The notes: a model not told the origin generated them from the letters alone. DNA of 64,000 bases from Mytilus californianus (GCF_021869535.1 NW_026262615.1:6696001-6760000), one strand, 5' to 3'; shown: positions 15,481-48,266, counted from the first letter of the stretch. A program made the numbers and translations.

Positions 15481-18400
15481 TTTCGAATGTTTTTTTTTAT
15501 GTATAAATACACATCCACGTTCATTTTTATGTTTAGAGATTACTTTATCTATACATAACATTATACAAATTTACTATGAGGTTATATCCTAACTATCCTG
15601 CTGCCTGTCGATACTTTTATTTTAGCATTGCACTAGTCATGACTTCTTTGACTGTCCATGGCGTTAAAACACTAGATCCCTTGGTTGTGTTTTAATTGAT
15701 TTTAGTCTCTTATGCATGATTGTTTAGTATTAATTGTGTTTGGCTTTAAACTAGCTTTCAGTAACTGCGAGTACTCTCAAATCGTACTTTCGTGTTAATT
15801 TGACATGTAGACATAATTTGTAATGCGTTTTTTTTTATTCAATGTTTACTTAGTTTGTGATATATTTCGTCTCACTATTTTTAAAATGTACCACCTTTGA
15901 TAAGTATTTAGTATGACGATAAATGTTCACTTCTGTACTCGTACTGTTAAAAACAAATGTATCTATTTTGTAAAAAATATTTCCGTACTCTTAACAACAA
16001 AATTATTATAGTTAAATTTACCTGTGTACGATATTTTATTTATCGCCATTTTGTCCTAGGTAAGAGTTGTCTTTTTGACATTGTTATTCATCTTTTTTAG
16101 TAATATTGTATTTATATTGTGTCATAGATCAAATGTACTCGTTCAGTGTATGTTTACTTGTTTTTGTTTATATGTCTTTTTTGATCGATTTAAATCATTT
16201 CAATTGATATTTTATAGTGTGTCTTTTTAAGTTGTAATGCTACACTACTGTTTCCTGTTAGGGTGAAGGTTGGCGCCTGTTAAAACATTTAAGCCAGTTG
16301 CATTTGTATGCACATTTGTTTGACACTAGTCATTTTGGAGCCCTTTCAGTTTACACAAAAACACTGTTGTGCTGAGGTCAAAAACAGCATATTGAACAGG
16401 GCATACAGCATGTTACAGCAAAATCCCCAATTTAACATTGTTCATGCAATAGTTGTTAATTGATAATTTAACAATTGTAGCCTTTGGTTGAAGTCCATAC
16501 GATGTTATATCGACCTAGAGAAGCTTATCGACCTCGGACCTCGTCCTTAGTCAATATACTTCTCTTAGGTCGATATCACCTCGTATCGATCTCATACAAA
16601 GGCTATAATTGTATAATCCAAAAAATGTTCTAGTTTGTTAATTTTATTGAATTTGATGGTTTGTTCTGCACTAGATAGGTAGACATTATATTATCTAGCT
16701 CTGTCAAATTTTAAATATGACCAGAGACATATATTAAAGCACATGTGTATATATGTCTCTGATATGACAATTGCGGGAAATCGATGTATAAAATGCTTGT
16801 AAAATCGCAAATATTGCAGTACGGTAATATTTTGTATTTCTCAGTTTAAATATAGTATAAAAAAGAGGGGGCTGATTGTTGTACCCACCAATTTCCCATT
16901 ATTTGACGTTTAATTATATATAAACCTTTTCAAATATTAAATGCGCAACCAAATCTTTGTTTCCTTGTTTGATTTTTGTAATTTATGTTTCCGAAGGCAG
17001 TTGATTGGATATCAGTTTAACGTAGGCCTGGCTTTTTCCACAGCTATCCTTTTAGACAAACTTGTGTTTTTATAGACACGTGCTATACTTCTCGTATAGG
17101 CTGAATAGAGAATAATTGGGAGAAAATAAGAATAGAGAAAAATGACATAAAAAATTAAAGAATACAGAAAAGAAGGACACCCCCTTTCCACACCCTCATT
17201 AGAGCGTTTTGATTACTTTAAATATAAAAATTATAATAAATTAGAGTTACATCGTGGAACGTCTTAACACTGATTTTTCTGTTTAAAAATTATCAAAGCA
17301 ATACTTATAAGTTTTTCTCGGCACGTTTAATACTTCAGAGAGAGTATGTCATGCGTGATCAATGCTTATTCGAGAATTTCTGGTCATGTTGGTCAATTTT
17401 ATCTAATAAAAAAGTTTTGAAGATGAATGTTAAATTTGATTGAAATCCGGATTTGACTTTTTTATGTATGTTGGCGTTTGTTTTTGTAGCAGTTCAGTGT
17501 TGTCTGTTGTTCCGTTATTGTCCCTCGGTGTTGGTTTGTGACCTGGATTTGTTTTCGCTTAATCGATTCATGACTATTGAACAGCGGTATACTATTGTTA
17601 ACTTTATTCAAGATTATTTTCAGCAGTGATATACAGTTTTGAAATGTTGAAGAAAACAAACCTTTTATTAAGGGATGCATAACTAGTATTTTTTTTTTTA
17701 AAAACCGAGGCGAAAGATACCAGAGGGACATTCAAACTCATAAGTCGAAAATAAACTGACAACGCCATGGCTAAAAAGAAAAAGACAAACACACAATAGT
17801 ACACAAAGCACAACATAGAAACTAGAGACTGAGCAACACGAAAAATTCAAGTGTTATAAGAATTAGGGCATCTTGTCAACAGTAATACACTAATGTTGCA
17901 TTGTTGATCTTAAAGATTAGAGGTGATGTGTGACTGTTATATACACATAGTGCAAGCTTGCTATAAACACACACAAACAGTGAGTTTCTTAGAAATATCA
18001 AAATATGTCAAACAATCAATTTTTTTGCAGACCTTGTTTAATATTTTTTTTTCTGAGACATAATATATATGTTAGTGTAATAGTCCCATGTTTTTCGTTT
18101 TGTTTATTTTAAATGAAGCCATTTGACAAATTTGACATATCTACATATAGTCAGGAGAAACTATTTTACGTGTCATTTCATTTGAATGCTAAAAAAGAGT
18201 AAAAGACAAGACCCTGATACCTCTCTTTGTTAACAAATAGGGGGGGGGGGGGTCGAGATAATCCCCCCCCCCCCAATCAAGGGTGATACAACACTTATCC
18301 TTTAATATAGATTATTCTTCGTAATAAATGATGATATTTCAATAACCTATTTGTACTTTATGCCATAATTTTACTTGGCCAGGAAAATATCAGCATTGTT

Positions 18401-18739: not shown

Positions 18740-20784
18740 CCGGTGTCATATGGTATTTTGAATCCCATTGAAAATTGACCCCGGGGTCAAAATACCGCTA
18801 TGGTAAATTGAATCCCCTCTGTATGGAAAATTGATGCCCCCCCCAATGGTAAATTGACCCCCATGTTATTTTTTTCCTTCTAAATAATTATTAGAACATG
18901 ATACGTTATTTTAAAGCTTATTGTAGATTGAAAATCAGACATACAAAAAAGGGAGGTCAATTTTCCATGGTAGGTAAAAAAAAACAAAACCACATGGCTT
19001 GGTATAAGTGCTCTGAAGTCTTTACCAACATAATTTCAATCAAAATAATATTGAAGCATCATAACTAGACTATGTAGCTTAAATGCTTTGATTATTTGAA
19101 ATCCTAACATATAAAGGAAGTTAAATTTTCCATGGTAAACAAGGGGGAGGGGGTCAAGTTTCCATGGCTCAGTAAAATAGTCAAACCATCTTTTTCAACA
19201 TGTTTTATATATACCATATATTTATTAGAGTATTAAAACTTTGAAAAGAAGTTTAAATGATTTGATTGTTGATATTGGAGATGTATAGACAAGAGGGTTC
19301 AATTTGCCATGGCAGGGGGTCAAAATACCATGGCTACGTAAAATTGTTAAAAAAATCTTTTCCAACATGTTTCATATATACCAAATACTAGTCACAGCAT
19401 TATAACTATGTAATATAGTTTGAATAGATATTTTTTTTTTGAAATTTAAGGTGTATAGGACGGGATTCAATATACCATGGCAGGGGGGTCAAAATACTAT
19501 GGATAGGTTAAAATTTTGAAACGTCTATTCCAGCAGGTTTAATAGATAACAAGTACTTATTGGAGTATTATTACTACATGTATGTAGGGGGTTCAATATA
19601 CCATGGCAGAGGGGCCAAAATACCATGACTAAGTACACATTTTAAAACATCTTTATAAGCATGTTTAATACACACCAACTACTTATTATTACTATATGTA
19701 AAAAAGTTAGAATAGCTATTATTCTTGCAAATGGAGGTATATAGCTTTTCTAACTCCCTAACATAGTAATAATACTACAATAAGTAGTTGGTATGTATTA
19801 AACATTCTTATAAAGATGTTTATAAAATTTTACTTAGCCATGGTTTTTTTACCTCTCAGCCGTGGTATATTGAACCCCCTCCTATACACCTCCAATTTAA
19901 AAAAATATAGCTTTTTAACTCCATTTCATAGTTATAATACTCCAATAAGTTGTTGGTATGTAATAAACATGCTTATAAAGATGTTTGAAAATTTTACTTA
20001 GTCATGGTATTTTGACCCCCCTGCCATGGTATATTGAACCCACTCCTATACACCTCCATTTTCAAGAATTATAGCTATTCTAACTCTTTTACATAAAAAT
20101 AATACTCTAATAAGTAGTTGGTATATATTAAACATGCTGGAAAAGATGTTTGAAAAATTTTACTTAGCCATAGTATTTCGACCCCCCCTGCCATAGTATA
20201 TTGAACCCCCTACTATGCACCTCCAATTTCAAATATTATAGCTATTTTAACTCCTTTACATAGTAATAATACTCCAATCAGTAATTGGTATGTATTAAAA
20301 ATGCCTATAAAGATGTTTGGAAAATTTTACTTAACCATAGTATTTTGACCCTCCAGCCATAGTATATTGAACCCCCTACTATACACCTCCAATTTCAAAT
20401 ATTATAACTAATTTAACCCCTCTTAATAGTAATTATACTCCAATCAGTAATTGGTATGTATTAAACATGGCTATAAAGATGTTTGGAAAATTTTACTTAA
20501 CCATAGTATTTCGACCCCCCTGCCATGGTATATTAAACCCCTTACTATACACCTCCAATTAAAAAAAAAACATAGCCAACATATTGTACATTTAAAAATC
20601 TGCAATGCTTTTGACTAAAACAGGAGGGTTCAATTTTTCAAGGTGGGGTTCAAAATAACATATGGGAAAAATTACCCCGGGGGTCAAAATACCATGCGGT
20701 ATAATGACCCCGGAGTCAATTTTCCATATGGTATTTTATCCCGGGTTCACTTTTCAGGGGGTTCAAAATACCTTATGACACCGG
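18740..20784. mobile_element. Foldback-like element with ~27-bp TIRs and inverted arms of ~170-bp tandem repeats
   Basis: Left end CCGGTGTCATATGGTATTTTGAATCCC; right end reverse-complements to CCGGTGTCATAAGGTATTTTGAACCCC. Units with GGGGGTCAAAATACCATGG at ~19310, 19480, 19600 switch to the reverse complement at ~19830, 20000, 20170, 20340, 20500. No TSD identified. Confidence 0.75.
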
Positions 20785-21364
20785 CTATATGCAGTTTTTT
20801 TAAAGGTTTTTTGGAAGTTTTTTACCCAATATTTGGACTGAGCTTTTTATAGTCCTTTTAATGTTAATACTAAAGGAGAGAAGGTCACGTTTTTCATTTA
20901 ATGAAATATTCCCCTTCGTGAATGATGATATTGCATACATTAGTTAGACGAGAGCAACATGTGGATGATTACCTGCTTATCCATCCTTTTTTTGCTTTTT
21001 GCAATGGCATTGTCACTTTGTTTTTCGACTTATGTGTTCGACTATCCTTTTGGTATCCTTTGCCTCTATTATACACTCAAAATAATGATGTTACCATATA
21101 AAAACAACAGTAAATGACTGTGTTGGCTGTAACATCAACACATTTGTCGTGAAGAGAGGATACAGCATGCACAATGGATTTTTTGAAAGGATTAAAAACC
21201 CATGTGCTCATTTTATTCGTAGAGTTTGAATCCCCTTCTGAATGCACGACTGAATAGCTCTGATCTATTCAGATAAAGTGTATAGTTTTGGTTCACTTGG
21301 GTCTCATTTTACCATCAACTACACCCATCAGTAATTTGGAGTTACTGAAAGTTGAAAATAAGTA

Positions 21365-22111
21365 TACCTCCTGGTTGTGAATTATATGTATTTGGTATTA
21401 TGAATCATTTGCCTTGATCATTCGATATTTATATGGCAAAAAAAATATGGAAACATGTACTATTAAATTTATACCCGCATTTATTGAGAAAAAAATCACA
21501 TATATCAATTATTCAAATACAAGTTGAAAATACCAATGAATATTCCCACAAAATATCACCAAAAAAATGTAACATGTAGCTAATGTATATCCCACAAAAT
21601 ATCATCAAACGATATAACAAAACGTTTATTCTCACACACTTTTACAAATTTAATGTCATACATATTATTAATAAACAGATGCAATGCTATAATAGGTGGT
21701 CCAATAAAACTCATCTAACCTAATAACTGAATTCAAGTTTACCTCCTGGTTGTGAATTATATGTATATGGTATTATGAATCATTTGCCTTGATCATTTGA
21801 TATTTATATGGAAAAAAAATATGGAAACATGTACTATTAAATTTATACCCGCATTTATGGAGAAAAAAATCACATATATCAATTATTCAAATACAAGTTG
21901 AAAATACCAATGAATATTCCCACAAAATATCACCAAAAAAATGTAACATGTAGCTAATGTATATCCCACAAAACACCCTCAAACGATATAACAAAACGTT
22001 TATTCTCACACACTTTTACAAATTTAATGTCATACATATTATTAATAAACAGATGCAATGCTATAATAGGTGGTCCAATAAAACTCATCTAACCTAATAA
22101 CTGAATTCAAG
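21365..22111. repeat. Near-perfect 375-bp tandem duplication
   Basis: CCTCCTGGTTGTGAATTATATG at 21367 and 21742; both copies end CTGAATTCAAG (21737, 22111). Confidence 0.92.
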
Positions 22112-22499
22112 ATTACAACATACAAGTAAGACTAAGTAAGTTTGCACTCGAGAGAAAATAAACCACACAGATTGTATCTAAGATATCGAAAGTTAAAATT
22201 TCAAACGAAAGCAAAGAATGACTTTTCCAACAATGATGATGATAAAATTCAAACCATGTTAGAATTGTCCCTCAGTTTTATATAAGAATGAAATCGATCC
22301 ACTTTGTTTTTATTTTTTCCAATCAAACTTGTCCCTTCTTTTTTGGTTCATGGCTTTCAATTTACGCAGTTTTTTTCCTGGAAGAAAAAGAATAAATAAA
22401 TGACCAGCCGCACTGTCTTACATGTGTGATATTTCGACTGAGTGTGGATTAACATGGTGGGTGATATATCAATGTCGTAATAAATTCAAAATTGGAAAA

Positions 22500-23170
22500 T
22501 AATATTAACTTCATTGACACAACAATAAACTGATGACAAAAAGATATGTCTCGCCTGTAGGCATAAAAGTCAGAAATAGACAATCTGATGGACAGTAACA
22601 TTGCTTATTATTTCAAAGTCATTTGACCATGATCTTGTGGGCAGGGCCTTTAAATGATCACTAACTTAGATGTACAGACAGTAATGTAACTATATAGACA
22701 ATATCATTGTCTATTGTAAGCAGTTCTTAGCAATCTAACTTCAGCAGAAAACTTAACATTGAAAATTCATAATTAATTCAAAGTCGCTGAACCATGACCT
22801 AAGGGCCAGGGCCTCAAAATAGTCGTCAAACAGATATGTACTGATAGTAATGCAACCTTATATTAAATATAATTGATCTATCACAAGTAGATCCTATCAA
22901 ACTATGTTAAGTAGAAAAGTTAACATTTAAAATTGTTAGTTCATTCAAAGTCGCAGAACCATGACCTAGGGACAGGACCTCAAAATGGCCGTCAAACTAA
23001 TATGTACTGATAGTAATGCAAGTTTGTATTAAATATCAATGATCTATCACAAGTAATTCCTTTCAAACTAACTTAGGCAGAAAACTTAACAATTGTTGAC
23101 GCCATCGTTGCCGTCGCCGGAAATGCAATCCCTATATTTCGCTTTCCGCGACTTTTATCACAGGCGAGAC
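22500..23170. repeat. Interspersed repeat with ~180-bp internal tandem units
   Basis: TTCAAAGTC...GACCATGA units at ~22615, 22780 and 22945; ends CAGGCGAGACAAAAA. Confidence 0.6.
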
Positions 23171-24298: not shown

Positions 24299-25729
24299 AA
24301 CATTGTATTAATGTCGACCATAACTTCTGGTTGTCATAATGAATGAAAAGATTATGGGGGAAATCTACCTGATTTATTGTCCAAATTGTCTACTGATTTG
24401 TTGTTGGATCCTTTGTTTGAGTGACGGCATGATTCTGTAAAAAGATATGAACAATATACAATCTCATTGACTCAAGATTTCGCTAAATACAGTGAGACTT
24501 TTATAGACCCATCTTGACTATCAGTAATTGTTTTATAAATAAAGGCAATAGTAGTATACCGCTGTTCAATAGTCATCAATCTATATAATAACTGAAACAA
24601 ATCCGAGTCACAAACCAAAACTGAGGGAAACACATCAACTATAAGAGGAAACAAAACGGAACAACAGAAACACTGGACTGCTACAAAAACAAACGCCAAC
24701 ATACATAGAAACGGACTATGTGATAACAACTGCCATATTCCTGACTTGGTACAGGACATTTTAAGAAAAAATTGTGGGTTGAACCTGGTTTTATGGCTAG
24801 CCAAACCTCCCGCATATATTGCAATGTTAAACATACCGCTAAAATGACAACATTACGTTACAGAAACACAGTACGAATAAATGCAAGAACTTTCAGAACA
24901 GAGAAATACGTAAATAAATAATTAAATAGTACATTTCAACATGCAAACCACAGAATAACAACAAACACCTAATGTCACATTAAACTTTTTTCTTATTTGG
25001 ATAGTAATGGCATATCCTTGAATTATTCTATTAAACCTATTAACAACTTAAACAAACTTAGAATGATAAATGCAAGCGTGAAATGTTGTATGGATACCTG
25101 TCTAGTAAGGAAGACTGAGTGTATGTTACCCTGTAGCTTTTTTGGTTTATTTTTGTTTTTTGGTTGGGAAAATAGATTTATAAATACTTTTCAGAATAAC
25201 AGTATCAATTTATCATGTTAGCAAAAATCAGCTTCAGCTTTGAAATAAAGATGTTTACCACCGGGTCGATGACCCAAGGGTATCACCACGCCAGTTATCA
25301 GCACTTTCATGTTGACATGATATATAAATAATTTGTTCATTTTCTGTCAATTCATGATTCAGGGGATTTAATGAAATAAGTGATTTTTAAATCACTCATT
25401 TGAGTAGCAAATTAGAAATTCTGTGATTTTGTAGTTTTGCCAAAAACACACAGGTTGAGATTATATCTAATTATTTGAAAAAAATAATAAAAAATACTGT
25501 TAGGTAGCATTGTTTACGCCTTCTATGCAATCATTCTTCTGTAAATTCTAAAATTGTTGAAAATAATGCTACAATGAAGGCTTTACATAATGATCTTATA
25601 CTTTCCAAACAGATTTTTCCCATGAGTGGGCGTATTTTTCTGTAAAATTCAAGGTTTCGGTTTTTAGATAATGTAATAAAATTTTACTGTTCGCTATAAA
25701 AAATTAACTGTTCGGGGATGTTGAAAATA

Positions 25730-26415: not shown

Positions 26416-26574
26416 CTGGACATTTTCCTAAGTTGCAAAGTGATGTTTCAGTTCTGGAACCAACACATTTCAGTCCATCGTCAGACGGTGGGGGATTGTC
26501 ACATGTTCTGGTTTTCACTATCACACCATCTCCACAAGTAACAGAACATGAGGAGTTGAACCAAAGGCTCCATC
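26416..26574 (-). CDS. Thrombospondin type-1 repeat (TSP1) exon
   Basis: GWSLWFNSSCSVTCGDGVIVKTRTCDNPPPSDDGLKCVGSRTETSLCNLGKCP carries the WSxW, CSVTCG, RxC and CP motifs; 159 bp, phase 1-1, pyrimidine tract before AG, GTAAAT donor. Confidence 0.93.
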
Positions 26575-27559: not shown

Positions 27560-27714
27560 CTGGAATTATGCAGCCTGTCATGTTAAAATTGCGAATATCT
27601 ATGGTGGTATTCAAACCAGTACATGTTCCTATGTAAACAAGGTTTGTTTGATTTGATGCCCATTCTTTAAAATCAATCATGCGGCAGCATATGAATTGGT
27701 TTCTGTTCATATTC
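27560..27714 (-). CDS. LRR C-terminal cap (LRRCT)-like exon
   Basis: TTTAAG|G AAT ATG AAC AGA AAC CAA TTC ATA TGC TGC... = NMNRNQFICCRMIDFKEWASNQTNLVYIGTCTGLNTTIDIRNFNMTGCIIP(G), resembling NPFxCxC...FxxW...C...C. 155 bp, phase 2 in and phase 1 out (CCAG|GTAAG), consistent with both neighbours. Confidence 0.85.
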
Positions 27715-28009: not shown

Positions 28010-28090
28010 AACACAAATTATTATAATTATAATTCTGTTTTCGAGAACAGACCTTCTGGTAAATTTATTAAGAAGTTACCCTGAAAAGTT
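28010..28090 (-). pseudogene. Last LRR module, with in-frame stops
   Basis: TTATAG|A ACT TTT CAG GGT AAC TTC TTA ATA AAT TTA CCA GAA GGT CTG TTC TCG AAA ACA GAA TTA TAA...TT|GTAAGC (81 bp). Confidence 0.75.
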
Positions 28091-29221
28091 CTATAAGAAA
28101 ATCAATAGTCATGAATGAAAATCTGAATTAGAACACTGTTGCTAAAATTACCAAAAATTCCAAATGCCGTTCTCCGTGTATTCAAAAGATAAATATATTT
28201 TTCTTAGAACTGATATTGCTTGAACAGCAATATTTGATTATTGAACGACATTAAAAGTTAAATAAAGAAGTACAAATGAATTGTGCGTAAACAATAAAAT
28301 GATGGTAAACCTGCTGCGTTGTTTGCACACAAGAATATTTTGAAGAACATCAGTTATATATGTGCATGATTAGATATGCAATACAATCTACCATATGATA
28401 AGGTAAACATGATAAGTCGTAGATAAACTTAAGACACTAATACTCAAATTATCAAAAAAATATAACAAAAATACTGAACTACAAGGCAAGTTCAAAAAGG
28501 GGAAGTCCATAAAATCAGACAAAATCAAACGCTATCAAACAATGGAATAATTAAAAACAACTGCCATTTTCCTGACTTGGAAGACAATCATGTATCATGA
28601 TTGAGTAAGAATATATTCAATCAAGACAATGGTTCTTGAATTACGCAAGATTTCAAAGGCTTACCTTGAAATATAGAATGAGATTAGGAGTAAAATGAGT
28701 ATGTACATTATAGATATAATTAATATTGAAGTCAAATGTCACATTCGTGGTTTGAAATCACCACTTCAGTGTTGACAGGCTTGTGATACAGTAGATAAAT
28801 AAGTTAGACTACCCGGTATCCCTTAAATGTATAGACGAACATCAACTATATATGATCGTTATAGGAATATGATAAAATAAAGGCTAAGGTGATAGTCATC
28901 ACACTTACAAAAGTCGAAGCTTTGTGTTCGATGATAACAGACCAACTGGTAAACTTACTTCTATGTAACAACTTGTTTAATCAAGACAATAATACTCAAA
29001 TTACCAAAAGGAACTCTAGGAGAAATTTTGAAATATTGAATACAATTAAAAGTTAAATAAGCATGTAAGAAAGATATGTTTTAGATAATAAAATGTTGAT
29101 AAACCTTCTGAGCTATTGGCACAGAAGAATATTGAAGAACACATGGTACATATGAATGAGGTTAAAAATTCCATCAATAATAGATAAGTTTAAGTCTGAT
29201 ATGAATATAAATTACACTAAC

Positions 29222-29293
29222 AAATATCTAAGATTTGTGTTGTTAGAAATCAGACCTTCTGGTAAAGTTACTAACTTTTTTTCGTGTAAATAC
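29222..29293 (-). CDS. Intact array LRR exon (72 bp), conserved Asn replaced by Lys
   Basis: CTTCCAG acceptor, GTTAGT donor, YLHEKKLVTLPEGLISNNTNLRY(L). Confidence 0.75.
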
Positions 29294-30018
29294 CTGGAAG
29301 GAATTCAAATATCTTCATTTTGTAAGAACATGTTAAATTAAAACACCAATACCGAACTTATCAGAGGTTACCAAATTCGATCTTCTTGTATTCAAAAGAT
29401 ATATTTTTCTTGAAACTGACATTGTTGATGCATTTTTATAATCTTTAACTGCAACCTTTAAATAATGAGTGACATTTAAAATAAGATTAAGTATGCACAA
29501 TTTTAAGGAAGTTTGCGAACAAAATGAAATGAAGATAGACCTTCTGAGTTGTCGTCACACGAGTATATTGAGGAACATCAGTTATATATGTACGTGGTTA
29601 TATAAACAACACAATCTTTAATAAAATAAAGTCTGTGATAAACATTTTTCACAATTACAATTTTTTTAACTTGGTGTTTGATGATAACATTCTAACTGGT
29701 AAACTTTCCTTGTTGTCTTTGGCTACAATTTTTTTTATTAAAATCAAGCATCTTAATTATGTAAGAACATATTCAATCAAGACAATTATATTCAAATTAC
29801 CAAAAGGAGTTGTAAGATTAATTTTGAAATATTGAATAACATTAAAAGTTAAATAAGAATATAAAAAGGAAGTTTTCATAGACAATAGAATGGAGATAAA
29901 CCTGTTGAGCTATTGGCACACATGTATATCAAAACCACAGGGTACATATGAACAAGGCTGATAAATCTACACAATAATAAATAATTTTAAGTCTGATATA
30001 AATATCAATTGCACGTAC

Positions 30019-30089
30019 AAATATTGAAGATTTGCATTAATATTAATAGACCTTCTGGTCAACTTTCTAAATTGTTATTCAGTAAATAT
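30019..30089 (-). pseudogene. LRR pseudo-exon, 71 bp with in-frame TGA
   Basis: AG and GT intact, but TTA>TGA and a 1-nt deletion. Confidence 0.8.
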
Positions 30090-30404
30090 CTAACAGAAAA
30101 TCAATGATCATGAACATACTTAATAAACCTACTCATATTCAAATTGCCAAACATTTCAAAGGTCTATATTCTGTTATTGAATGGATCAAATATATTTGTC
30201 ATCCACCTGATGTTGTTGATATAATTTTAATTGCTTAAAAATTCAACATTTACTATTGACATAATTAAAATAGAGTGATGACAAAACTGCTCAGTTCTCG
30301 GCACATAAGTATATTGAAAAACATCAGATATGTGTGTACATGATTATCTATATAATATCATCTAAAATAAAATAAAGTCCGAGATGAGCATAGTTCATAC
30401 TTAC

Positions 30405-30476
30405 AATGTATTAAGATTCGTGTTCGACAAAAACAGATCTTTTGGTAAACTTTCTAACATGTTATTAGTTAAATCT
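30405..30476 (-). CDS. Intact array LRR exon (72 bp)
   Basis: CTTCCAG acceptor, GTAAGT donor, DLTNNMLESLPKDLFLSNTNLNT(L). Confidence 0.88.
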
Positions 30477-32185
30477 CTGGAAGAAAATCAAGTATCATGA
30501 TTATGTAAGAACAGGTTACATTAAAGCACTGATACTGAACTTACCAAAGATTACCAATTTGATCTCCTTGTATTCAATGAGTGTATACTGGTGATAAACC
30601 TGCTGAGCTATTGACTAACAAGTATATTTAAACCCCTTCATATAGGAACATCATAAAAAATAATCCAATATAATATTTTAATAATAAGTGTAAGTCTGGC
30701 ATATTGAAGATTGGTGTTCAACATGTTCAATGTTAACTGACCTTCTGGTAAACTTTCTAACTTGTTATTCATTAAATAACTAATAGAAAATCAAGGATCA
30801 TTAACACACCCAATTTATCTTCATATATTCAAACTACCAAACATTTTAAAGCTTGATCTTGAGTTATTCAACCGATCAAATATATTTGTCTTCCACCTGA
30901 TATGATAGATAAAAAGGAATTCTAAGATTAATTTTGAAATATTGAATAACATTAAAAGTTAAATTGGCATATAAAAAGGAAGTCTGACATATTGAAGATT
31001 GGTGTTCAACATGTTCAATGTTAAATGACCTTCTGGTAAAATTTCTAACTTGTTACTCATTAAATAATTAATAGAAAATCAATGATCATGAAAATCCTTA
31101 ATTTATCTTCTTATATTTTCATTACCATACATTTTAAAGGTTGATCGTAAGTTATTCAATCGATCAAATATATTTGTCGTCCACCTGATATGATAGATAA
31201 AATTGGTATTGCTTTAAAATTCAAACATAAAAAAATGAACTGAATTAAAAAAGAATGATGGCAAAACTGCTGAGTTCTCAACACACAAGTATTTTGAAGA
31301 AAATCAGATATGTGTACGTGATTAATTATACAATATAATCTAAAACACAATTAAGTCCTAAGATGATCACAATTCATACATACAATGTTTTAATTTTTGT
31401 GTTGTTAGAAAACATATGAACGAGGTTAAGAATTCCACACACTATTAAATAAGTTTAGGTCTGATATAAATATCAATTACACTTAAAATTCTATAGGATT
31501 CATGTTGAACAGAAACAAATCTTCTGGTAAAGTTACTAACTTGTTATGCCTTAAAAATCTGGAAGAAAATCAAATATCTTGATTGTGTAGGAACATGTAA
31601 AATAAAAACACTGATACTAAACTTACCAAAGAATACCAATTTGATCTCCTTGTATTCAATAAGTTTATAATTGTGATAAACCGACTGAGCTATTGGCACA
31701 CAAGTATATTAAAACCCCTTTATATAGGATAGGAACATGATCAACAATAATCCAATATAACCTTTTAATAAGTTTAAGTCTGACATATTGAAGATTTGTG
31801 TTCAACATGATCAATGTTAACTGATCTTCTGGGAAGTTTTCTAACTTGTTATTCAGTAAATATCTAATAGAAAATTGATGATCATGAACATAGTTACTTA
31901 ATTAACCTACTTATATTCAAATTACCAAACATTTCAAAGGTTGATCTTCAGTTATTCAATGGATCAAATATATGTGTCATCAACCTGATATTGTTGATGT
32001 GATTTTCATTGCTTTAAAAATCAACATTATTGAACGAAATTAAAATAGAATGATGACAAAACTACTGAGTTCTCGGCACACAAGTATATGTAAGAACATC
32101 AGATGTATGTGTACGTGATTAGATATACAATTTAAATAATATAATATGTAAGAAAAAGTCTGAGATGAGCATAAATCATACTTAC

Positions 32186-32257
32186 AATCTTTCAAGTTTT
32201 GTGTTGCTAGAAAACAGACCTTCAGGTAAAGTTATTAACTTGTTCTGGCGTAAAAAT
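32186..32257 (-). CDS. Intact array LRR exon (72 bp)
   Basis: CTTTCAG acceptor, GTAAGT donor, FLRQNKLITLPEGLFSSNTKLER(L). Confidence 0.88.
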
Positions 32258-34021
32258 CTGAAAGGAAGTCAACTATCTTGATTTTGTAAGAACATGTTAA
32301 ATTAAAACACCGATACCGAATTTACCAGAGATTACCAAATTCGATCCCAGTGTATTGAAAAGATGAAATATATTTTTCTTCAAACTGACATTGTTGATGC
32401 ATTTTAATAAGCTTCAACTGCAATCTTTAATCAATGAGTGACATTGAAACTAACATTAAGTATGCACAAAGGAAGTTTGCCAATAAAATGAAATTAAGTT
32501 AGACCTTCTGAGTTGTCAACAGACAAGTATATTGAGGAATATCAGTTATATATGTACGTGATTATATAAACAACACAATCTTTCATAAAATAAAGTCTGT
32601 GATAAACATTATTCACAATTACTTGTAACTTGGTGTTTGATAATAACAGACTACCTGGTAAACTTTCCTTGTTGTCTTTGGTTACAATTTTGGAGTATAA
32701 TCAAGCATCTTAATTATGTAAGAACATATTCAATCAAGACAATTATATTCAAATTACCAAAAGGAATTCTAAGATTAATTTTGAAATATTGAATAACATT
32801 AAAAGTTAAATTAGCATATAAAAAGGAAGTCTGACATATTGAAGATTGGTGTTCAACATGTTCAATGTTAAATGACCTTCTGGTAAACTTTCTAACTTGT
32901 TACTCATTAAATAATTAATAGAAAATCAATGATCATGAAAATGCTTAATTTATCGTCTTATATTTACATTACCATACATTTTAAAGGTTGATCTTAAGTT
33001 ATTCAATCGATCAAATATATTTGTCGTCCACCTGATATGATAGATAAAGTTTGTATTGCTTTAAAATTTAACATAAAAAATGAACTTAATTAAAAAAGAA
33101 TGATGGCAAAACTGCTGAGATCTCAACACACAAGTATTTTGAAGAAAATCAAATATGTGTACGTGATTAAATATACAATATAATCTATAACACAATTAAG
33201 TCCTAAGATGATCACAATTCATACATACAATGTTTTAATTTGTGTGTTGTTAGAAAACATATGAACGAGGTTAAAAATTCCACACACTATTAAATAAGTT
33301 TAGGTCTGATATAAATATCAATTACACTTAAAATTCTATAGGATTCATGTTGAACAGAAACAAATCTTCTGGTAAAGTTATTAACTTGTTATGCCTTAAA
33401 AATCTGGAAAAAAAATCAAATATCTTGATTGTGTAGGAACATGTTAAATCAAAACACTGATACTTAACTTACCAAAGATTACCAATTTGATCTCCCTGTA
33501 TTCAATAAGTTTATCATTGTGATAAACCTGCTGAGCTATTGGCATACAAGTATATTAAAACCCCTTTATATAGGAACATGATTTGCAATAATTTAATATA
33601 ATCTTTTAATAAGTTTAAGTCTGACATATTGAAGATTGTGTTCAACAAGTTCAATCTTAACTGACCTTTTGGGAATTTTTTTAACTTGTTATTAAGTAAA
33701 TATCTAATAGAAAATCAATGATCATGAATATACTTAATTAACCTACTTAAATTCAAATTACAAAACATTTCAAAGGTTGAACTTCAGTTGTTCAATGGAT
33801 CAAATGTAATTGTGATCAACCTGATATTGTTGATGTAATTTTCATTGCTCTAAAATTCAACATTATTTAAGGAAATTAAAATAGAATGATGACAAAACTA
33901 CTGAGTTATCGGCACACAAGTATATGTAAGAACAGCAGATGTGTGTCTACGTGATTAGATATACAATTTAAATAATATAATATGTAAGAAAAAGTCTGAG
34001 ATGAGCATAAATCATACTTAC

Positions 34022-34093
34022 AATGTTTTAAGTTTAGTGTTGTTAGAAAACAGACCTTCTGGTAAAGTTACCAACGCGTTATTCTCTAAATCT
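34022..34093 (-). CDS. Intact array LRR exon (72 bp)
   Basis: CTTCCAG acceptor, GTAAGT donor, DLENNALVTLPEGLFSNNTKLKT(L). Confidence 0.88.
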
Positions 34094-34720
34094 CTGGAAG
34101 ACAATCAATTATCATGATTATATAAGAACATGTTACATTAAAGCACTAATTCTGAACTTACTAAAGATTATCAATCTGATCTCCTTGTATTCAATAATTC
34201 TATAATAGTGATAGACCTGCAGAGCTATTGGCACACAAGTATATTAAAACCCCTTTATATAGGATAGGAACATGATTTGCAATAATTTAATATAATCTTT
34301 TAATAAGATTAAGTCTGACATATTGAAGATTTGTGTTCAACATGATCAATGTTAACTGATCTTCTGGGAAGTTTTCTAACTTGTTATTCAGTAAAAATCT
34401 AATAGAAAATTGATGATCATGAACATAGTTAATTAATTAACCTACTTATATTCAAATTACCAAACATTTCAAAGGTTGATCTTCAGTTATTCAATGGATC
34501 AAATATATGTGTCATCAACCTGATATTGTTGATGTGATTTTCATTGCCTTAAAAATCAACATTATTTAACGAAATTAAAATAGAATAATGACAAAACTAC
34601 TGAGTTCTCGGCACACAAGTATATGTAAGAACAGCAGATGTGTGTGTACGTGATTAGATATACAGTTCAAATAATATAATATGTAACTTAAAGTCTGAGA
34701 TGAGCATAAATCATACTTAC

Positions 34721-34792
34721 AATCTTTCAAGTTTTGTGTTGCTAGAAAACAGACCTTCAGGTAAAGGTCCTAACTTGTTTTCGTATAAATAT
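34721..34792 (-). CDS. Intact array LRR exon (72 bp)
   Basis: CTTTCAG acceptor, GTAAGT donor, YLYENKLGPLPEGLFSSNTKLER(L). Confidence 0.88.
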
Positions 34793-35775
34793 CTGAAAGG
34801 AAGTCAAATATCTTGATTTTGTAAGAACATGTTAAATTAAAACACCGATACCGAATTTACCAGAGATTACCAAATTCGATCTCCGTGTATTGAAAAGATG
34901 AAATATATTTTTCTTCAAACTGACATTGTTGATGCATTTTTATAAGCTTCAACTGGAATCTTTAAACAATGAGTGGCATTGAAACTAACATTAAGTATGC
35001 ACAAAGGAAGTTTGCCAATAAAATGAAATTAAGGTAGACCTTCTGAGTTGTCAACAGACAAGTATATTGAGGAATATCAGTTATATATGTACGTGATTAT
35101 ATAAACAACACAATCTTTCATAAATAAAGTCGTGATAAACATTATTCACAATTACAATTCTTGTAACTTGGTGTTTGATGATAACAGACTATCTGGTAAA
35201 CTTTCCTTGTTGTCTTTGTTTACAATTTTGGAGTAAAATCAAGCATCTAAATTATGTAAGAACATATTAAATCATGACAATTATATTCAAATTACCACAA
35301 GGAATTCTAAGATTAATTTTGAAATATTGAATAACATTAAAAGTTAAATTAGCATACAAAAAGGAAGTCTGACATATTGAAGATTTGTGTTCAACATGTT
35401 CAATGTTAACTAACCTTCTGGGATGTTTTCTAACTTGTTATTCAGTAAATATCTAATAGAAAATTGATGATCATGAACATAGTTACTTAATTAACCTACT
35501 TATATTCAAATTACCAAACATTTCAAAGGTTGATCTTCAGTTATTCAATGGATCAAATATATTTATCATCAACCTGATATTGTTGATGTGATTTTCATTG
35601 CTTTAAAAATCAACATTATTTAACGAAATTTAAAATAGAATAATGACAAAACTACTGAGTTCTCGGCACACAAGTATATGTAAGAACAGCAGATGTGTGT
35701 GTACGTGATTAGATATACAGTTCAAATAATATAATATGTAACTTAAAGTCTGAGATGAGCATAAATCATACTTAC

Positions 35776-35847
35776 AATGTTTCAAGTTTTGTGTTGCTAG
35801 AAAACAGACCTTCAGGTAAAGTTACTAACTTGTTTCCGTATAAATAT
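35776..35847 (-). CDS. Intact array LRR exon (72 bp)
   Basis: CTTTCAG acceptor, GTAAGT donor, YLYGNKLVTLPEGLFSSNTKLET(L). Confidence 0.88.
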
Positions 35848-36212
35848 CTGAAAGGAAGTCAAATATCTTGATTTTGTAAGAACATGTTAAATTAAAACAC
35901 CGATACCGAATTTACCAGAGATTACCAAATTCGATCTCTGTGTATTGAAAAGATGAAATATATTTTTCTTCAAACTGACATTGTTGATGCATTTTAATAA
36001 GCTTCAACTGCAATCTTTAAACAATGAGTGACATTGAAACTAACATTAAGTATGCACAAAGGAAGTTTGCCAATAAAATGAAATTAAGGTAGACCTTCTG
36101 AGTTGTCAACAGACAAGTATATTCAGGAATATCAGTTATATATGTACGTGATTATATAAACAACACAATCTTTCATAAAATAAAGTCTGTGATAAACATT
36201 ATTCACAATTAC

Positions 36213-36284
36213 AATTCTTGTAACTTGGTGTTTGATGATAACAGACTATCTGGTAAACTTTCCTTGTTGTCTTTGGTTACAATT
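36213..36284 (-). pseudogene. LRR pseudo-exon with dead acceptor (TCCAA); copies at 35156, ~32623 and 29659
   Basis: Open frame IVTKDNKESLPDSLLSSNTKLQE with GTAATT donor; acceptor AG mutated to AA. Confidence 0.78.
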
Positions 36285-36927
36285 TTGGAGTATAATCAAG
36301 CATCTTAATTATGTAAGAACATATTCAATCAAGACAATTATATTCAAATTATCAAAAGGAATTCTAAGATTAATTTTGAAATATTGAATAACATTAAAAG
36401 TTAAATTAGCATATAAAAAGGAAGTCTGACATATTGAAGATTGGTGTTCAACATGTTCAATGTTAAATGACCTTCTGGTAAACTTTCTAACTTGTTACTC
36501 ATTAAATAATTAATAGAAAATCAATGATCATGAAAATCCTTAATTTATCTTCTTATATTTACATTACCATACATTTTAAAGGTTGATCTTAAGTTATTCA
36601 ATCGATCAAATATATTTGTCGTCCACCTGATATGATAGATATAATTTGTATTGCTTTAAAATTCAACATAAAAAAATGAACTAAATTAAAAAAGAATGAT
36701 GGCAAAACTGCTGAGTTCTCAACACACAAGTATTTTGAAGAAAATCAGATATGTGTACGTGATTAAATATACAATATAATCTATAGCACAATTAAGTCCT
36801 AAGATGATCACAATTCATACATACAATGTTTTAATTTTTGTTTTGTTAGAAAACATATGAACGAGGTTAAGAATTCCACACACTATTAAATAAGTTTAGG
36901 TCTGATATAAATATCAATTACACTTAA

Positions 36928-36999
36928 AATTCTATAGGATTCATGTTGAACAGAAACAAATCTTCTGGTAAAGTTACTAACTTGTTATGCCTTAAAAAT
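36928..36999 (-). pseudogene. LRR pseudo-exon with dead donor (TTAAGT); same lesion at 33332-33403 and 31487-31558
   Basis: Intact AG and open frame FLRHNKLVTLPEDLFLFNMNPIE, but the donor reads TTAAGT instead of GTAAGT. Confidence 0.8.
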
Positions 37000-37626
37000 C
37001 TGGAAGAAAATCAAATATCTTGATTGTGTAGGAACATGTTAAATCAAAACACTGATACTAAACTTACCAAAGAATACCAATTTGATCTCCTTGTATTCAA
37101 TAAGTTTATAATTGTGATAAACCTGCTGAGCTATTGGCTCACAAGTATATTAAAACCCCTTTATATAGGATAGGAACATGATTAACAATAATCCAATATA
37201 ACCTTTTAATAAGTTTAAGTCTGACATATTGAAGATTTGTGTTCAACATGATCAATGTTAACTGATCTTCTGGGAAGTTTTCTAACTTGTTATTCAGTAA
37301 ATATCTAATAGAAAATTGATGATCATGAACATAGTTACTTAATTAACCTACTTATATTCAAATTACCAAACATTTCAAAGGTTGATCTTCAGTTATTCAA
37401 TGGATCAAATATATGTGTCATCAACCTGATATTGTTGATGTGATTTTCATTGCTTTAAAAATCAACATTATTGAACGAAATTGAAATAGAATGATGACAA
37501 AACTACTGAGTTCTCGGCACACAAGTATATGTAAGAACAGCAGATGTATGTGTACGTGATTAGATATACAATTTAAATAATATAATATGTAAGAAAAAGT
37601 CTGAGATGAGCATAAATCATACTTAC

Positions 37627-37698
37627 AATTTTTCAAGTTTTGTGTTGCTAGAAAAAAGACCTTCTGGTAAAGTTATTAACTTGTTATCCGATAAATTT
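37627..37698 (-). CDS. Intact array LRR exon (72 bp)
   Basis: TTCCAG acceptor, GTAAGT donor, open frame NLSDNKLITLPEGLFSSNTKLEK(L). Confidence 0.88.
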
Positions 37699-38399
37699 CT
37701 GGAAGGAAATCAAATATCTTGATTATAGATCATTTAACACTAAAACACTGATACTGAACTTACCAAAGATTACCTACTTTGAACTCCATGTGTTCAATAG
37801 ATAAATAAATTTTTCTTTAAACTGACATTGTTGATGCAATTGTTTAAGCTTTACTGCCACCTTTAAATGTGAGCGGCATTTAAAGTAAGATTAGTATGCA
37901 CAAAGGAAGTTCTTTGGATACCAGAATATGTCTAATATACTTAATTAACCTACTTATATTCATATTACCAAACATTTCAAAGGTCTATCTTCAGTTATTC
38001 AGTGGATCAAATATATTTGTCATCTATACTCATAATTTATTAGACATTAAAATCATTTGATTGAACACCATAATAAGATTGATCGACATAATAATGGACT
38101 GGACTACATGTCAACTGTAAAACAAAACGAAATCCCGTCCAACATCTGAAAAAGGGAATGTTTAAAACATGCCTCATTAAAACTACCATACTCCAATGTA
38201 AATTCAAAAATTCATAAGATGTTCCGAGGAACCTTGTGTCTCGCGATTGCTGCTGTCAGTCTAAAAGTGTAATGATGACATAAAAAGTGATAGCCTAGTC
38301 AATTTAGCTCTAATATTACTCAACCTGCAATTAATTGCAACACAAGATTTGTTTAAGTGTAAATTAGAACATAGACTTGTACTAAAAACATATAATAAA

Positions 38400-47187: not shown

Positions 47188-47259
47188 AAGATTATAAGGG
47201 ATGTTAAACCAGAAAGCGCATTTGTTCTTACTGTTGTTAAGTTATTTCTACGAAGACTT
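47188..47259 (-). CDS. LRR receptor gene, first LRR exon (72 bp)
   Basis: CTTTCAG|A AGT CTT CGT AGA AAT AAC TTA...ATC TT|GTAAGT; SLRRNNLTTVRTNALSGLTSLII(L); phase 2-2, matching the previous exon. Confidence 0.9.
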
Positions 47260-48102: not shown

Positions 48103-48266
48103 AAAATTGTTGTAGTTGAAGAAATATCTGTATGCGGTATTTCATCAAAACTCCTTCCGGAACAATCAATTAGTGTACCAGTACATGAACAAGATGAAGG
48201 ACATCCATTAACTAAATCCCCTTTCAACAGGCGTATAAACAACATAACTGCAACTGACATCAACAT
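48103..48266 (-). CDS. LRR receptor gene, first coding exon: signal peptide plus LRR N-terminal cap (LRRNT)
   Basis: Manual translation MLMSVAVMLFIRLLKGDLVNG-CPSSCSCTGTLIDCSGRSFDEIPHTDISSTTTI(L): hydrophobic leader then the CPxxCxC...xDCSxxxxxxIP LRRNT pattern. Ends TT|GTAAGT (phase 2). Upstream acceptor TATTACAG at 48309-48308 gives 41 nt of 5'UTR in this exon. Confidence 0.92.

What the first reader, a model, noticed from the sequence alone, without database searches (positions are those of the whole stretch)
29222..37698. Intact LRR exons diverge non-synonymously at concave-face positions while flanking introns are nearly identical
Exons 35776-35847 and 32186-32257 differ at 8 of 72 nt, in five codons, all amino-acid changing (Y/F, Y/R, G/Q, V/I, T/R). 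The ~120 nt of intron upstream of them differ at only 3 positions. Exons 35776 and 34721 differ at 4 nt, all non-synonymous. The xLxxN strand reads NLSDN, YLYGN, YLYEN, DLENN, FLRQN, DLTNN, YLHEK, whereas LPEGLFSSNTKL is largely fixed. The xLxxN strand forms the ligand-binding concave face of LRR solenoids (established). The pattern suggests diversifying selection or targeted conversion (inference).
Basis: partly seen in the sequence, partly recalled or inferred. Interest (0 to 1): 0.82.

Follow-up and report, generated by a model that had tools for sequence, protein, structure and literature searches.

The report
Mussel LRR gene, duplicated diverging exons
A mussel gene for a secreted binding protein has recently copied its one-repeat exons several times, and the copies differ almost only at the residues that would touch a ligand; this is a known way for such proteins to evolve, seen here with a clean internal control.

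Summary
Seven intact 72-nt, phase-1 exons, each encoding one LRR, lie on the minus strand at 29222-37698.

The exons belong to a complete 13-exon gene (48266 to 22310) for a Mytilus-specific secreted protein: signal peptide, LRRNT, 8 LRRs, LRRCT, TSP1 and a basic tail. The locus is collinear with the M. californianus reference at 97-98% identity.

The array grew by nested tandem duplication of 0.7-3.6 kb units. Each unit carries one live exon plus decayed LRR pseudo-exons that now sit in the introns.

Among the three youngest live copies, 10 of 72 exon sites vary against 27 of 685 flanking sites (p=0.0014). The five concave-face codons, chosen in advance, hold 7 variable sites in 15 nt (p=1.7e-6).

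Dead modules with the same duplication history show no excess in nt 1-30: 4/240, against 18/90 in live exons. A plain mutational hotspot is therefore unlikely.

dN/dS alone is 2.5 and not significant. Short-tract conversion cannot be excluded, and recombinant modules do exist here.

My verdict is selection for diversity at ligand-facing residues after exon duplication. This is a new member of a known kind (brown-alga ROCO LRR exons, plant R genes). The scan noted the same pattern before in another gene of this genome (s1-342871).

The parts
48103..48266 (-). Exon 1: start codon, signal peptide and LRRNT cap (CPSSCSCTGTLIDCSGRSFDEIP)
   Evidence: Pfam LRRNT 26.7 bits against a cut-off of 25.8. 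GT donor, phase 1. Homologous to exon 1 of M. edulis P0002.
47188..47259 (-). LRR exon 1 (SLRRNNLTTVRTNALSGLTSLII), 72 nt, phase 1
   Evidence: corresponds to the second exon of P0002.
37627..37698 (-). Live array exon A37627 (NLSDNKLITLPEGLFSSNTKLEK)
   Evidence: AG|72|GT with an open frame.
35776..35847 (-). Live array exon A35776 (YLYGNKLVTLPEGLFSSNTKLET)
   Evidence: An RNA-like contig matches 35784-35835 exactly. The allelic copy in L002 differs at 1 of 59 nt.
34721..34792 (-). Live array exon A34721 (YLYENKLGPLPEGLFSSNTKLER)
   Evidence: An RNA-like contig matches 34721-34758 exactly; that part is shared with A32186.
34022..34093 (-). Live array exon A34022 (DLENNALVTLPEGLFSNNTKLKT)
32186..32257 (-). 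Live array exon A32186 (FLRQNKLITLPEGLFSSNTKLER); carries the 6-in-11-nt patch at nt 3-13
30405..30476 (-). Live array exon A30405 (DLTNNMLESLPKDLFLSNTNLNT)
   Evidence: Absent from the M. californianus reference haplotype L002.
29222..29293 (-). Live array exon A29222 (YLHEKKLVTLPEGLISNNTNLRY), last LRR before the cap
   Evidence: Absent from L002.
27560..27714 (-). LRRCT cap exon (NMNRNQFICCRMIDFKEW...CIIP)
   Evidence: No Pfam hit. 73-74% identical to the caps of Mytilus LRR-TSP1 proteins and about 92% to P0064.
26416..26574 (-). TSP1 domain exon (WSLWFNSSCSVTCGDG...)
   Evidence: Pfam TSP_1 45.8 bits against a cut-off of 21.6.
24369..24434 (-). Linker exon (ESCRHSNKGSNNKSVDNLDNKS)
   Evidence: Open in phase with AG/GT sites. 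The same peptide occurs in RefSeq P0064.
22310..22377 (-). Last coding exon: basic tail (GKKLRKLKAMNQKRRDKFDWKK) and stop codon
   Evidence: The tail is identical but for one residue in P0064.
37233..37304 (-). Dead module, type B (YLLNNKLENFPEDQ...). The normal donor is lost. Further copies at 35381-35452 (a B/D hybrid with a GT after nt 38), 34327-34398, 33632-33703, 31792-31863 and 30018-30089
   Evidence: B37233 and B31792 are identical over 72 nt. The first 38-40 nt are found joined to A-type exons in RNA-like contigs.
36825..36999 (-). Dead module, type C (FLRHNKLVTLPEDLF, then an insert of about 100 nt carrying a stop, then SN.TKIKT|gt). Further copies at 33229-33403 and 31384-31558
   Evidence: Copies differ by 0-1 of 72 nt.
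36438..36509 (-). Dead module, type D (YLMSNKLESLPEGH...); acceptor AG changed to AA. Further copies at 32843-32914, 30996-31067 and 30708-30779
36213..36284 (-). Dead module, type E (IVTKDNKESLPDSLLSSNTKLQE); no acceptor. Further copies at 35156-35227, 32618-32689, 29656-29727 and 28919-28990
   Evidence: E-like dead modules also occur in paralogue loci L001 and L003.
28019..28090 (-). Dead terminal module (TFQGNFLINLPEGLFSKTEL*), with an in-frame stop
   Evidence: The same dead module is present in L002. A live counterpart exists in M. coruscus P0023.
28900..37911 (-). Nested higher-order tandem repeat. Units are A-B-C-D-E (1.85 kb), A-B-E (1.05 kb), A-B (0.7 kb) and a 3.6-kb double unit
   Evidence: Self-alignments at 88-95% identity with offsets of 690, 1054, 1847-1852, 3589 and 5442 nt.

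Best explanation
The region is the LRR array of an intact, spliced Mytilus gene for a secreted LRRNT-LRR(8)-LRRCT-TSP1 protein. Each 24-residue repeat is its own 72-nt phase-1 exon.

The array grew recently by unequal crossing-over of 0.7-3.6 kb units. Each unit carries one live exon and several long-dead LRR modules, which explains why the introns around the live exons are nearly identical.

The live copies have since become, or been kept, different almost only in the codons for the solvent-exposed residues of the beta-strand and its rim (x3, x5, x7, x8, plus x12/x13). The scaffold codons stayed fixed. I attribute this to selection for diversity at the ligand-binding face. The raw variation probably comes from point mutation together with short templated patches.

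Shown here: the gene model, the duplication structure, the site-specific excess, and its absence from dead modules. Inferred: that selection is the cause, that the protein binds variable ligands, and that it has any immune role.
For: Gene and family:
- 13 exons, all with AG/GT sites, give a 395-aa open frame.
- The LRRNT and TSP1 domains pass Pfam's cut-offs.
- Homologues with the same architecture are found only in Mytilus.
- The tail exons match RefSeq P0064 at about 96% identity.
- The locus is collinear with the M. californianus reference at 96.7-98%.

Duplication: nested repeats at 88-95% identity.

Excess at face codons:
- Exon 10/72 against flanks 27/685, p=0.0014.
- Face codons 7/15 nt, p=1.7e-6; rest of the exon 3/57, p=0.41.
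- Replacement changes 9/54 against intron 27/685, p=6e-4.

Internal control: in pairs whose flanks on both sides differ by less than 7%, live exons differ at 18/90 in nt 1-30 and 2/126 in nt 31-72. Dead modules differ at 4/240 and 4/326. Flanks differ by about 3% in both classes.

The same positions are the most variable across 61 LRRs of ten family proteins. They sit on and next to the beta-strands of the model, whose nearest solved folds are Nogo receptor, hagfish VLR and GPIb-alpha.

Expression hint: RNA-like contigs cover the exons at depth 12-19, against about 3 for intron pieces.
Against: - dN/dS by itself is not significant (9 N to 1 S, binomial p=0.33), because the sample is three 72-nt exons.
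- Six of the ten variable sites form one cluster (nt 3-13 of exon 32186). At a neutral divergence of about 2.5%, six independent selected substitutions there are hard to credit, and a templated patch is more likely.
- Recombination between modules does occur. B35381 is a B/D hybrid. The reference haplotype carries a chimeric, dead A exon. Upstream and downstream flanks of the exons give different groupings.
- In paralogue L004 two live exons are identical over 58 nt inside introns only 81% identical, which points to exon conversion in this family.
- Expression of this very locus is not shown. The one raw RNA run gave 0 reads, and the RNA nature of the contig runs is a guess.
- The reference haplotype lacks five of the live exons, so the gene may be dispensable.
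Confidence: 0.6

Rival explanations
1. The pattern is a neutral recombination mosaic. The variable patches were pasted into live exons by short-tract gene conversion or unequal crossing-over, from other LRR modules or from live exons of paralogous genes in the cluster. No selection for diversity is involved. Introns look identical because the tracts are short, or because the donors' introns are too diverged to co-convert.
For: - The changes are clustered: 6 within 11 nt.
- Hybrid modules exist: B35381 and the chimeric A exon in L002.
- Upstream and downstream flanks give discordant groupings.
- In L004 two exons are identical over 58 nt inside diverged introns.
- A paralogous transcript exon shares the CCAGAACAAGTT stretch with exon 32186.
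- Exon 32186 nt 1-20 is nearer to the type-C pseudo-exon (3 mismatches) than to its sister exons (7 mismatches).
Against: - No exact donor was found in the window or in four related loci.
- Only 4 of the 7 derived sites of exon 32186 match module C, close to the chance expectation. Both encode Arg at x7, but with different codons (CGC against AGG).
- Dead modules, which would be equally good conversion targets, show no patches: 4/240.
- The changes fall on structurally exposed codons and spare the scaffold codons.
Confidence: 0.2
2. The exon differences are old and the intron identity is young. Concerted evolution (gene conversion) keeps homogenising the repeat units, and selection only prevents homogenisation of the ligand-facing patch. 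On this view divergence was preserved, not accelerated.
For: - Dead modules and introns are even more alike than allelic sequence: 0-1 of 72 between units, against 2.0-2.6% between haplotypes.
- The flank histories are mosaic.
- All seven exons differ by at least 10% in nt 1-30, whatever their flank similarity.
Against: - The reference haplotype's single copy has exactly the state expected for the ancestor of the 35776/34721 pair (E at x8, V-T at x12-13). This fits change after duplication for that pair.
- The explanation still requires selection for diversity, so it is a variant of the best explanation, not an opposite to it.
Confidence: 0.12
3. The pattern is chance or an assembly artefact in a collapsed or mis-joined repeat. 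Alternatively the gene is decaying, so the differences carry no meaning.
For: - The array consists of 88-95% identical repeats, which are hard to assemble.
- The reference assembly has a very different structure here.
- The raw RNA run gave no reads.
Against: - All 13 exons keep an open frame and canonical splice sites.
- Independent contigs from other runs reproduce the exon sequences, and L002 reproduces the C-D-E-A block at 98% identity.
- Decay would not spare the scaffold codons (0 of 51 nt changed) while hitting the face codons.
Confidence: 0.05

Closest known systems
LRR-ROCO genes of brown algae (Ectocarpus, Saccharina): single-LRR 72-nt exons with exon shuffling (PMC3341825, PMC11378527)
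   Same: Each LRR is its own 72-nt exon with the same intron phase on both sides. Exons are duplicated in tandem. 'Inactivated exons' with stops or lost splice sites lie in the arrays. Signs of diversifying selection appear at exposed LRR residues, and LRR exons are alternatively spliced.
   Different: Those proteins are intracellular GTPases in a stramenopile, with phase-2 exons. The gene here encodes an extracellular capped LRR with a TSP1 domain in a mollusc, and its exons are phase 1. The neutral controls used here (near-identical introns and co-duplicated dead modules) were not found in the parts of those papers that I read.
Plant resistance-gene LRRs (e.g. Cf-4/Cf-9, Xa21 families): diversifying selection on xxLxLxx residues together with sequence exchange (own knowledge; also summarised in PMC3341825)
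   Same: Hypervariable solvent-exposed strand residues sit on a conserved scaffold. Paralogues evolve by birth and death, and recombination and selection act together.
   Different: Plant LRR domains are mostly encoded in one or a few exons, and the diversity lies between genes. Here it lies between exons of a single gene.
Variable lymphocyte receptors of lamprey and hagfish
   Same: The fold class is the same: hagfish VLR A29 (2o6q) aligns with TM 0.83, rmsd 1.7 A and 32% identity. The hypervariable strand positions are the same, and many silent LRR modules lie close to the expressed gene.
   Different: VLR genes are incomplete in the germline and are assembled somatically from flanking cassettes (own knowledge). 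This gene is complete and conventionally spliced, and its silent modules are decayed exons inside introns. No somatic change was tested.
One-LRR-per-exon animal genes (Slit: own knowledge; gonadotropin receptors: cited in PMC11378527)
   Same: The layout of 72-nt in-phase exons permits exon duplication or skipping without a frameshift. Database sources even name the relatives 'slit-like'.
   Different: Those are conserved developmental genes with stable exon numbers. Here exon number and content differ even between two haplotypes that are only 2-3% apart.

Membership tests
Extracellular capped LRR proteins (LRRNT-LRR-LRRCT) | N-terminal cysteine cap (LRRNT) following a signal peptide | tested here: met
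   Pfam PF01462 scores 26.7 bits against a cut-off of 25.8 on exon 1. A hydrophobic N-terminus precedes it.
Extracellular capped LRR proteins (LRRNT-LRR-LRRCT) | Tandem 24-residue repeats of the form LxxLxLxxNxLxxLPxxxFxx | tested here: met
   Eight repeats have invariant L, N, L and P positions. Homologue proteins carry Pfam LRR_8, LRR_4 and LRR_5.
Extracellular capped LRR proteins (LRRNT-LRR-LRRCT) | C-terminal cysteine cap (LRRCT) | tested here: inconclusive
   Pfam gives no LRRCT hit at E<=1. The exon nevertheless has the four-cysteine pattern and is 73-92% identical to the caps of family members. The homologue model has the cap helix at residues 231-242.
Mytilus LRR-TSP1 secreted protein family (unnamed; sources call members slit-like, platelet glycoprotein V-like, ectin-like and so on) | LRRCT followed directly by one or more TSP1 domains and a short basic tail | tested here: met
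   TSP_1 scores 45.8 bits against a cut-off of 21.6. The predicted protein aligns end to end with P0002 and P0024 at 60-61% identity, and its 3' half matches P0064 at about 96%.
Genes under diversifying (positive) selection | dN/dS significantly above 1 at the sites in question | tested here: inconclusive
   9 N to 1 S gives pN/pS of about 2.5, p=0.33. Against intron as the neutral rate the excess is significant (p=6e-4; face codons p=1.7e-6). Dead modules show no excess. No codon-model or population test was possible.
Ectocarpus-type LRR exon shuffling | One 72-nt symmetric-phase exon per LRR, tandem exon duplicates, and inactivated exons within the array | tested here: met
   the definition is taken from PMC3341825 and PMC11378527.
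VLR-type somatic LRR assembly | A germline gene that is incomplete and is completed by copying from flanking cassettes | tested here: not met
   The germline gene is complete, with canonical splice sites throughout. Somatic change could not be tested with these tools.
Dscam-like alternative exon arrays | Duplicated exons used as alternatives in mRNA | tested here: inconclusive
   No raw RNA reads mapped to the locus. RefSeq isoform pairs of paralogues differ by exactly one 24-residue repeat (P0028/P0029 and P0030/P0032).

The most novel reading that the evidence does not exclude
The decayed LRR modules in the introns, and the LRR exons of neighbouring paralogues, serve as a template library. 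Short patches from it are copied into the ligand-facing part of live exons, in the germline or even somatically in immune cells. That would give a mollusc a cassette-based way of diversifying an LRR binding protein, analogous to pseudogene conversion in chicken antibody genes or to VLR assembly.
Probability: 0.08. Interest if true: 0.85.

Novelty: new member of a known kind. Interest (0 to 1): 0.4.

Why it matters
Mussels are known for very large presence/absence variation and for expanded recognition-gene families (PMC7653742). How single genes gain new binding surfaces is less well documented.

This locus shows the process at the level of single exons. Live LRR exons are born by unit duplication, change at ligand-facing codons, die, and remain as fossils in the introns. 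Two haplotypes only 2-3% apart differ by five live exons.

The co-duplicated dead modules give a rare built-in neutral control. The gene, and the cluster it belongs to, are therefore a good small system for testing selection against conversion in repeat proteins. They also offer candidate variable recognition molecules for mussel immunity or for adhesion biology. The principle itself is not new.

Tried and rejected
- Rfam scan of the whole window: no hit.
- Raw RNA run X21: 0 of 10.3 million reads laid, so splicing of this locus could not be read.
- Donor search for each exon's variable 20-mer, with up to 4 mismatches in the window and L001 and up to 2 mismatches in loci L001-L004: no donor found. 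The type-C pseudo-exon idea from note s1-340107 gives 4 of 7 matching derived sites, close to the chance expectation, and different Arg codons. I do not accept it as shown.
- The unknown exon start seen in an RNA-like contig is not in the window. That contig therefore comes from a paralogue or from another haplotype.
- DNA of the P0025 locus could not be fetched, because the gene model spans 178 kb. Only the last 10 kb of the reference array (L002) could be compared.
- Global alignment of the L004 repeat units failed because intron lengths differ. A local alignment replaced it.
- The spliced 395-aa protein has no reference id. It was therefore not sent to the large protein searches or to structure prediction, and homologue P0002 was modelled instead.
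- Literature searches for a described Mytilus LRR-TSP1 family found nothing specific.
- CpG decay was considered as a cause of the patch and rejected by eye. Most changes are not CpG transitions.


Full report
**What is there.**
The window is AT-rich animal DNA. Each starts with the third base of a Leu codon and ends with TT, so it is phase 1 on both sides. Each encodes one 24-residue repeat.

A profile built from the seven exons finds about 22 further LRR-like modules on the same strand between 28019 and 37304. All of them are dead, and they fall into four types:
- Type B has lost the normal donor.
- Type C carries an insert of about 100 nt with a stop.
- Type D has its acceptor changed from AG to AA.
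- Type E has no acceptor.

A last module at 28019 has an in-frame stop.

**The gene.**
Upstream, an exon at 48103-48266 encodes a start codon, a hydrophobic leader and an LRRNT cap (Pfam 26.7 bits against a cut-off of 25.8). A first LRR exon lies at 47188-47259.

Downstream lie four more exons:
- an LRRCT-like cap exon at 27560-27714;
- a TSP1 exon at 26416-26574 (Pfam 45.8 bits);
- a linker exon at 24369-24434;
- a last exon at 22310-22377, encoding a basic tail and the stop codon.

All 13 exons have canonical splice sites and join into a 395-residue open frame.

A full HMMER scan with the cap exon, followed by two word searches, finds the same architecture only in Mytilus species. Sources give the members loose names such as 'slit-like', 'platelet glycoprotein V-like' and 'ectin-like'. 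RefSeq P0064 of M. californianus matches the cap, TSP1 and tail at about 96%, which confirms the 3' exons.

The locus of P0064 in the M. californianus reference (L002) is collinear with the window at 96.7-98% identity. The window is therefore a M. californianus-like haplotype. Earlier notes of this scan had called the genome a mussel, and I verified that here.

An AlphaFold model of the 61%-identical homologue P0002 has mean pLDDT 82. It places its three-residue strands on x3-L4-x5 of each repeat. Its nearest solved folds are LRRTM2, Nogo receptor, hagfish VLR A29 and GPIb-alpha.

**How the array was built.**
Self-alignment shows nested tandem repeats with offsets of 690, 1054, about 1850, 3589 and 5442 nt at 88-95% identity. 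Read along the gene, the units are:
- A-B-C-D-E
- A-B-E
- A-B
- A-B-C-D-E
- A-B-C-D-D'
- A-B'-E'
- A-E''

'A' is the live exon. The dead types are shared by all units and also occur in paralogous loci of M. edulis and M. californianus. They therefore died before the recent unit duplications and were carried along as intron. This agrees with note s1-340066.

All of them hold. There are two small corrections. One step in the G/Q codon is necessarily silent. The V/G, T/P and V/I changes lie at x12/x13, behind the strand and not on the concave face.

**Is it more than chance?**
Three exons (35776, 34721, 32186) have closely related flanks on both sides. Across them, 10 of 72 exon sites vary against 27 of 685 flanking sites (Fisher p=0.0014). 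The exon holds the most variable 72-nt and 13-nt windows of the alignment.

I took the five concave-face codons from general LRR knowledge before looking at the data: x2, x3, x5, x7 and x8. They hold 7 variable sites in 15 nt (p=1.7e-6). The other 57 nt hold 3 and do not differ from intron. Counting clustered changes as single events still gives p=0.0016.

By Nei-Gojobori counting there are 9 replacement changes and 1 silent change. The pN/pS ratio of 2.5 is not significant by itself (p=0.33). Replacement changes do exceed the intron rate more than fourfold (p=6e-4).

**The internal control.**
The dead modules have the same origin, the same sequence type and the same duplication history as the live exons. 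I took all module pairs whose flanks on both sides differ by less than 7%:

| Class | nt 1-30 | nt 31-72 | Flanks |
|---|---|---|---|
| Live exons | 18/90 | 2/126 | about 3% |
| Dead modules | 4/240 | 4/326 | about 3% |

The patch of variation is therefore tied to being a live exon, not to the DNA sequence. This is the strongest argument here for a function-dependent cause.

Family-wide, the same positions (x3, x7, x2, x8, x5) have the highest entropy across 61 repeats of ten proteins.

**What speaks for recombination or conversion.**
- The histories of the two flanks disagree. Upstream, exon 32186 groups with 35776 and 34721. Downstream, it groups with 37627 and 34022.
- Between the units of 37627 and 32186, the 1276 nt downstream differ by 1.6%, the exon by 14% and the upstream flank by 24%. 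A block boundary therefore runs through the exon.
- Module B35381 is a B/D hybrid left by the crossover that removed C.
- Exon 32186 carries six changes within 11 nt at a neutral divergence of about 2.5%. That is hard to reach by single substitutions.
- In paralogue L004 two live exons are identical over their first 58 nt inside introns that are only 81% identical. They then differ at 8 of the last 14 nt.

I could not find a donor for any patch in the window or in four related loci. The type-C pseudo-exon proposed in note s1-340107 matches only 4 of the 7 derived sites.

**Comparison with the reference haplotype.**
L002 matches window 37219-35789 (the C-D-E block and the start of A35776) at 98.0%. 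That is 28 differences in 1431 nt, one of them in the exon (G/E at x8).

The L002 copy reads YLYENKLVT, the state expected for the ancestor of the 35776/34721 pair. After nt 58 it is fused to sequence typical of dead modules and runs into a stop.

L002 then continues through a D module and the dead terminal module to the cap exon. Within the 10 kb that could be fetched, it lacks the exons equivalent to A34721, A34022, A32186, A30405 and A29222. Upstream it has a block of transposon-like sequence of at least 7.4 kb.

Two haplotypes only 2-3% apart thus differ by five live LRR exons.

**Expression.**
The only raw RNA run gave no reads from about 6% of its data. Contigs of two runs guessed to be RNA cover exon parts exactly, at depth 12-19, against about 3 for intron pieces.

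Two of those contigs join the end or the start of an A-type exon to the first 38-40 nt of a type-B module. The join falls where some copies (such as B35381) have a GT. A 38-nt exon shifts the frame into a stop.

One of these contigs continues into an exon start that is absent from the window. These transcripts therefore come from a paralogue or from another haplotype.

RefSeq isoform pairs of two paralogues differ by exactly one 24-residue repeat. Exon skipping is thus at least modelled in this family.

**Reading.**
The best-supported account is birth-and-death evolution of single-repeat exons inside one gene. Selection favours or preserves differences at the ligand-facing residues. Recombination and short conversion probably contribute raw material. 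Confidence is about 0.6.

The rivals are a purely neutral conversion mosaic (0.2), old differences protected against homogenisation (0.12, which still involves selection), and artefact or decay (0.05).

**What is known.**
The closest precedent is the brown-alga ROCO genes. They have 72-nt single-LRR exons, exon shuffling, inactivated exons and diversifying selection (PMC3341825, PMC11378527). Plant R-gene LRRs and VLRs share the hypervariable strand positions.

The VLR mode of somatic assembly is not met, because the germline gene here is complete. This scan has already reported the same pattern in another gene of this genome (s1-342871).

The finding is therefore a new member of a known kind. 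Its merits are the built-in neutral control and the exon-level presence/absence difference between haplotypes.

Noticed in passing
window 37265-37304 and 35381-35452; RNA-like contigs of runs X20 and X25: The first 38-40 nt of a type-B 'dead' module appear spliced between A-type exons in RNA-like contigs. Copy B35381 has a canonical GT after nt 38. A 38-nt exon shifts the frame into a stop, so it could be a poison exon or give a truncated isoform. The contigs carry mismatches and an exon start that is absent from the window, so they come from a paralogue or another haplotype.
   Followed up: partly
L002 1-10000 against window 28296-37219: The M. californianus reference haplotype lacks the equivalents of five live LRR exons. 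It carries a chimeric, stop-containing copy of exon A35776 and a transposon-like block of at least 7.4 kb. Yet it is only 2-3% diverged in the shared sequence. This is exon-level presence/absence variation.
   Followed up: partly
Proteins P0028/P0029 (M. californianus) and P0030/P0032 (M. galloprovincialis): RefSeq isoform pairs differ by exactly 24 residues, meaning one LRR exon is skipped. In P0028 the skipped exon is one of two near-identical duplicates.
   Followed up: partly
L004 16118-16189 against 17490-17561: Two live exons of a paralogue are identical over their first 58 nt although their introns are only about 81% identical. They then differ at 8 of the last 14 nt (x24 to x3). This is the reverse of the window's pattern and suggests exon conversion with a tract end inside the exon. 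Two neighbouring modules (15412 and 17062) have open frames but share an AG-to-GG acceptor change.
   Followed up: partly
L003 4489-16383; window type-E modules: Type-E dead modules keep a strongly conserved LPDSLLSSNTKLQE stretch across distant paralogues, and in L003 a shared in-frame stop as well. Whether this is only co-duplication or some retained role, for example in splicing control, is open.
   Followed up: no
window 34131 / 37748 (run X8, organism B): One contig of the related organism joins 34131 to 37748, skipping 3616 nt, with 15 unmatched letters between the two sides. This could be a copy-number variant of the 3.6-kb double unit. The support is weak: one contig, with 24 letters on the shorter side.
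   Followed up: no
window 35846: Run X8 shows A>G at about a fifth of the depth. On the coding strand this changes Tyr to His at x5 of exon A35776, a replacement variant at a face position in a related organism or copy.
   Followed up: no
window 13640-14591 (+), 19148-20568, 21360-22116, 22731-23091: Downstream of the gene lie transposon-like open frames without a Pfam hit. One has a motif resembling reverse transcriptase, judged by eye. There are also tandem repeats of 166-167 nt and a 374-nt duplication.
   Followed up: no
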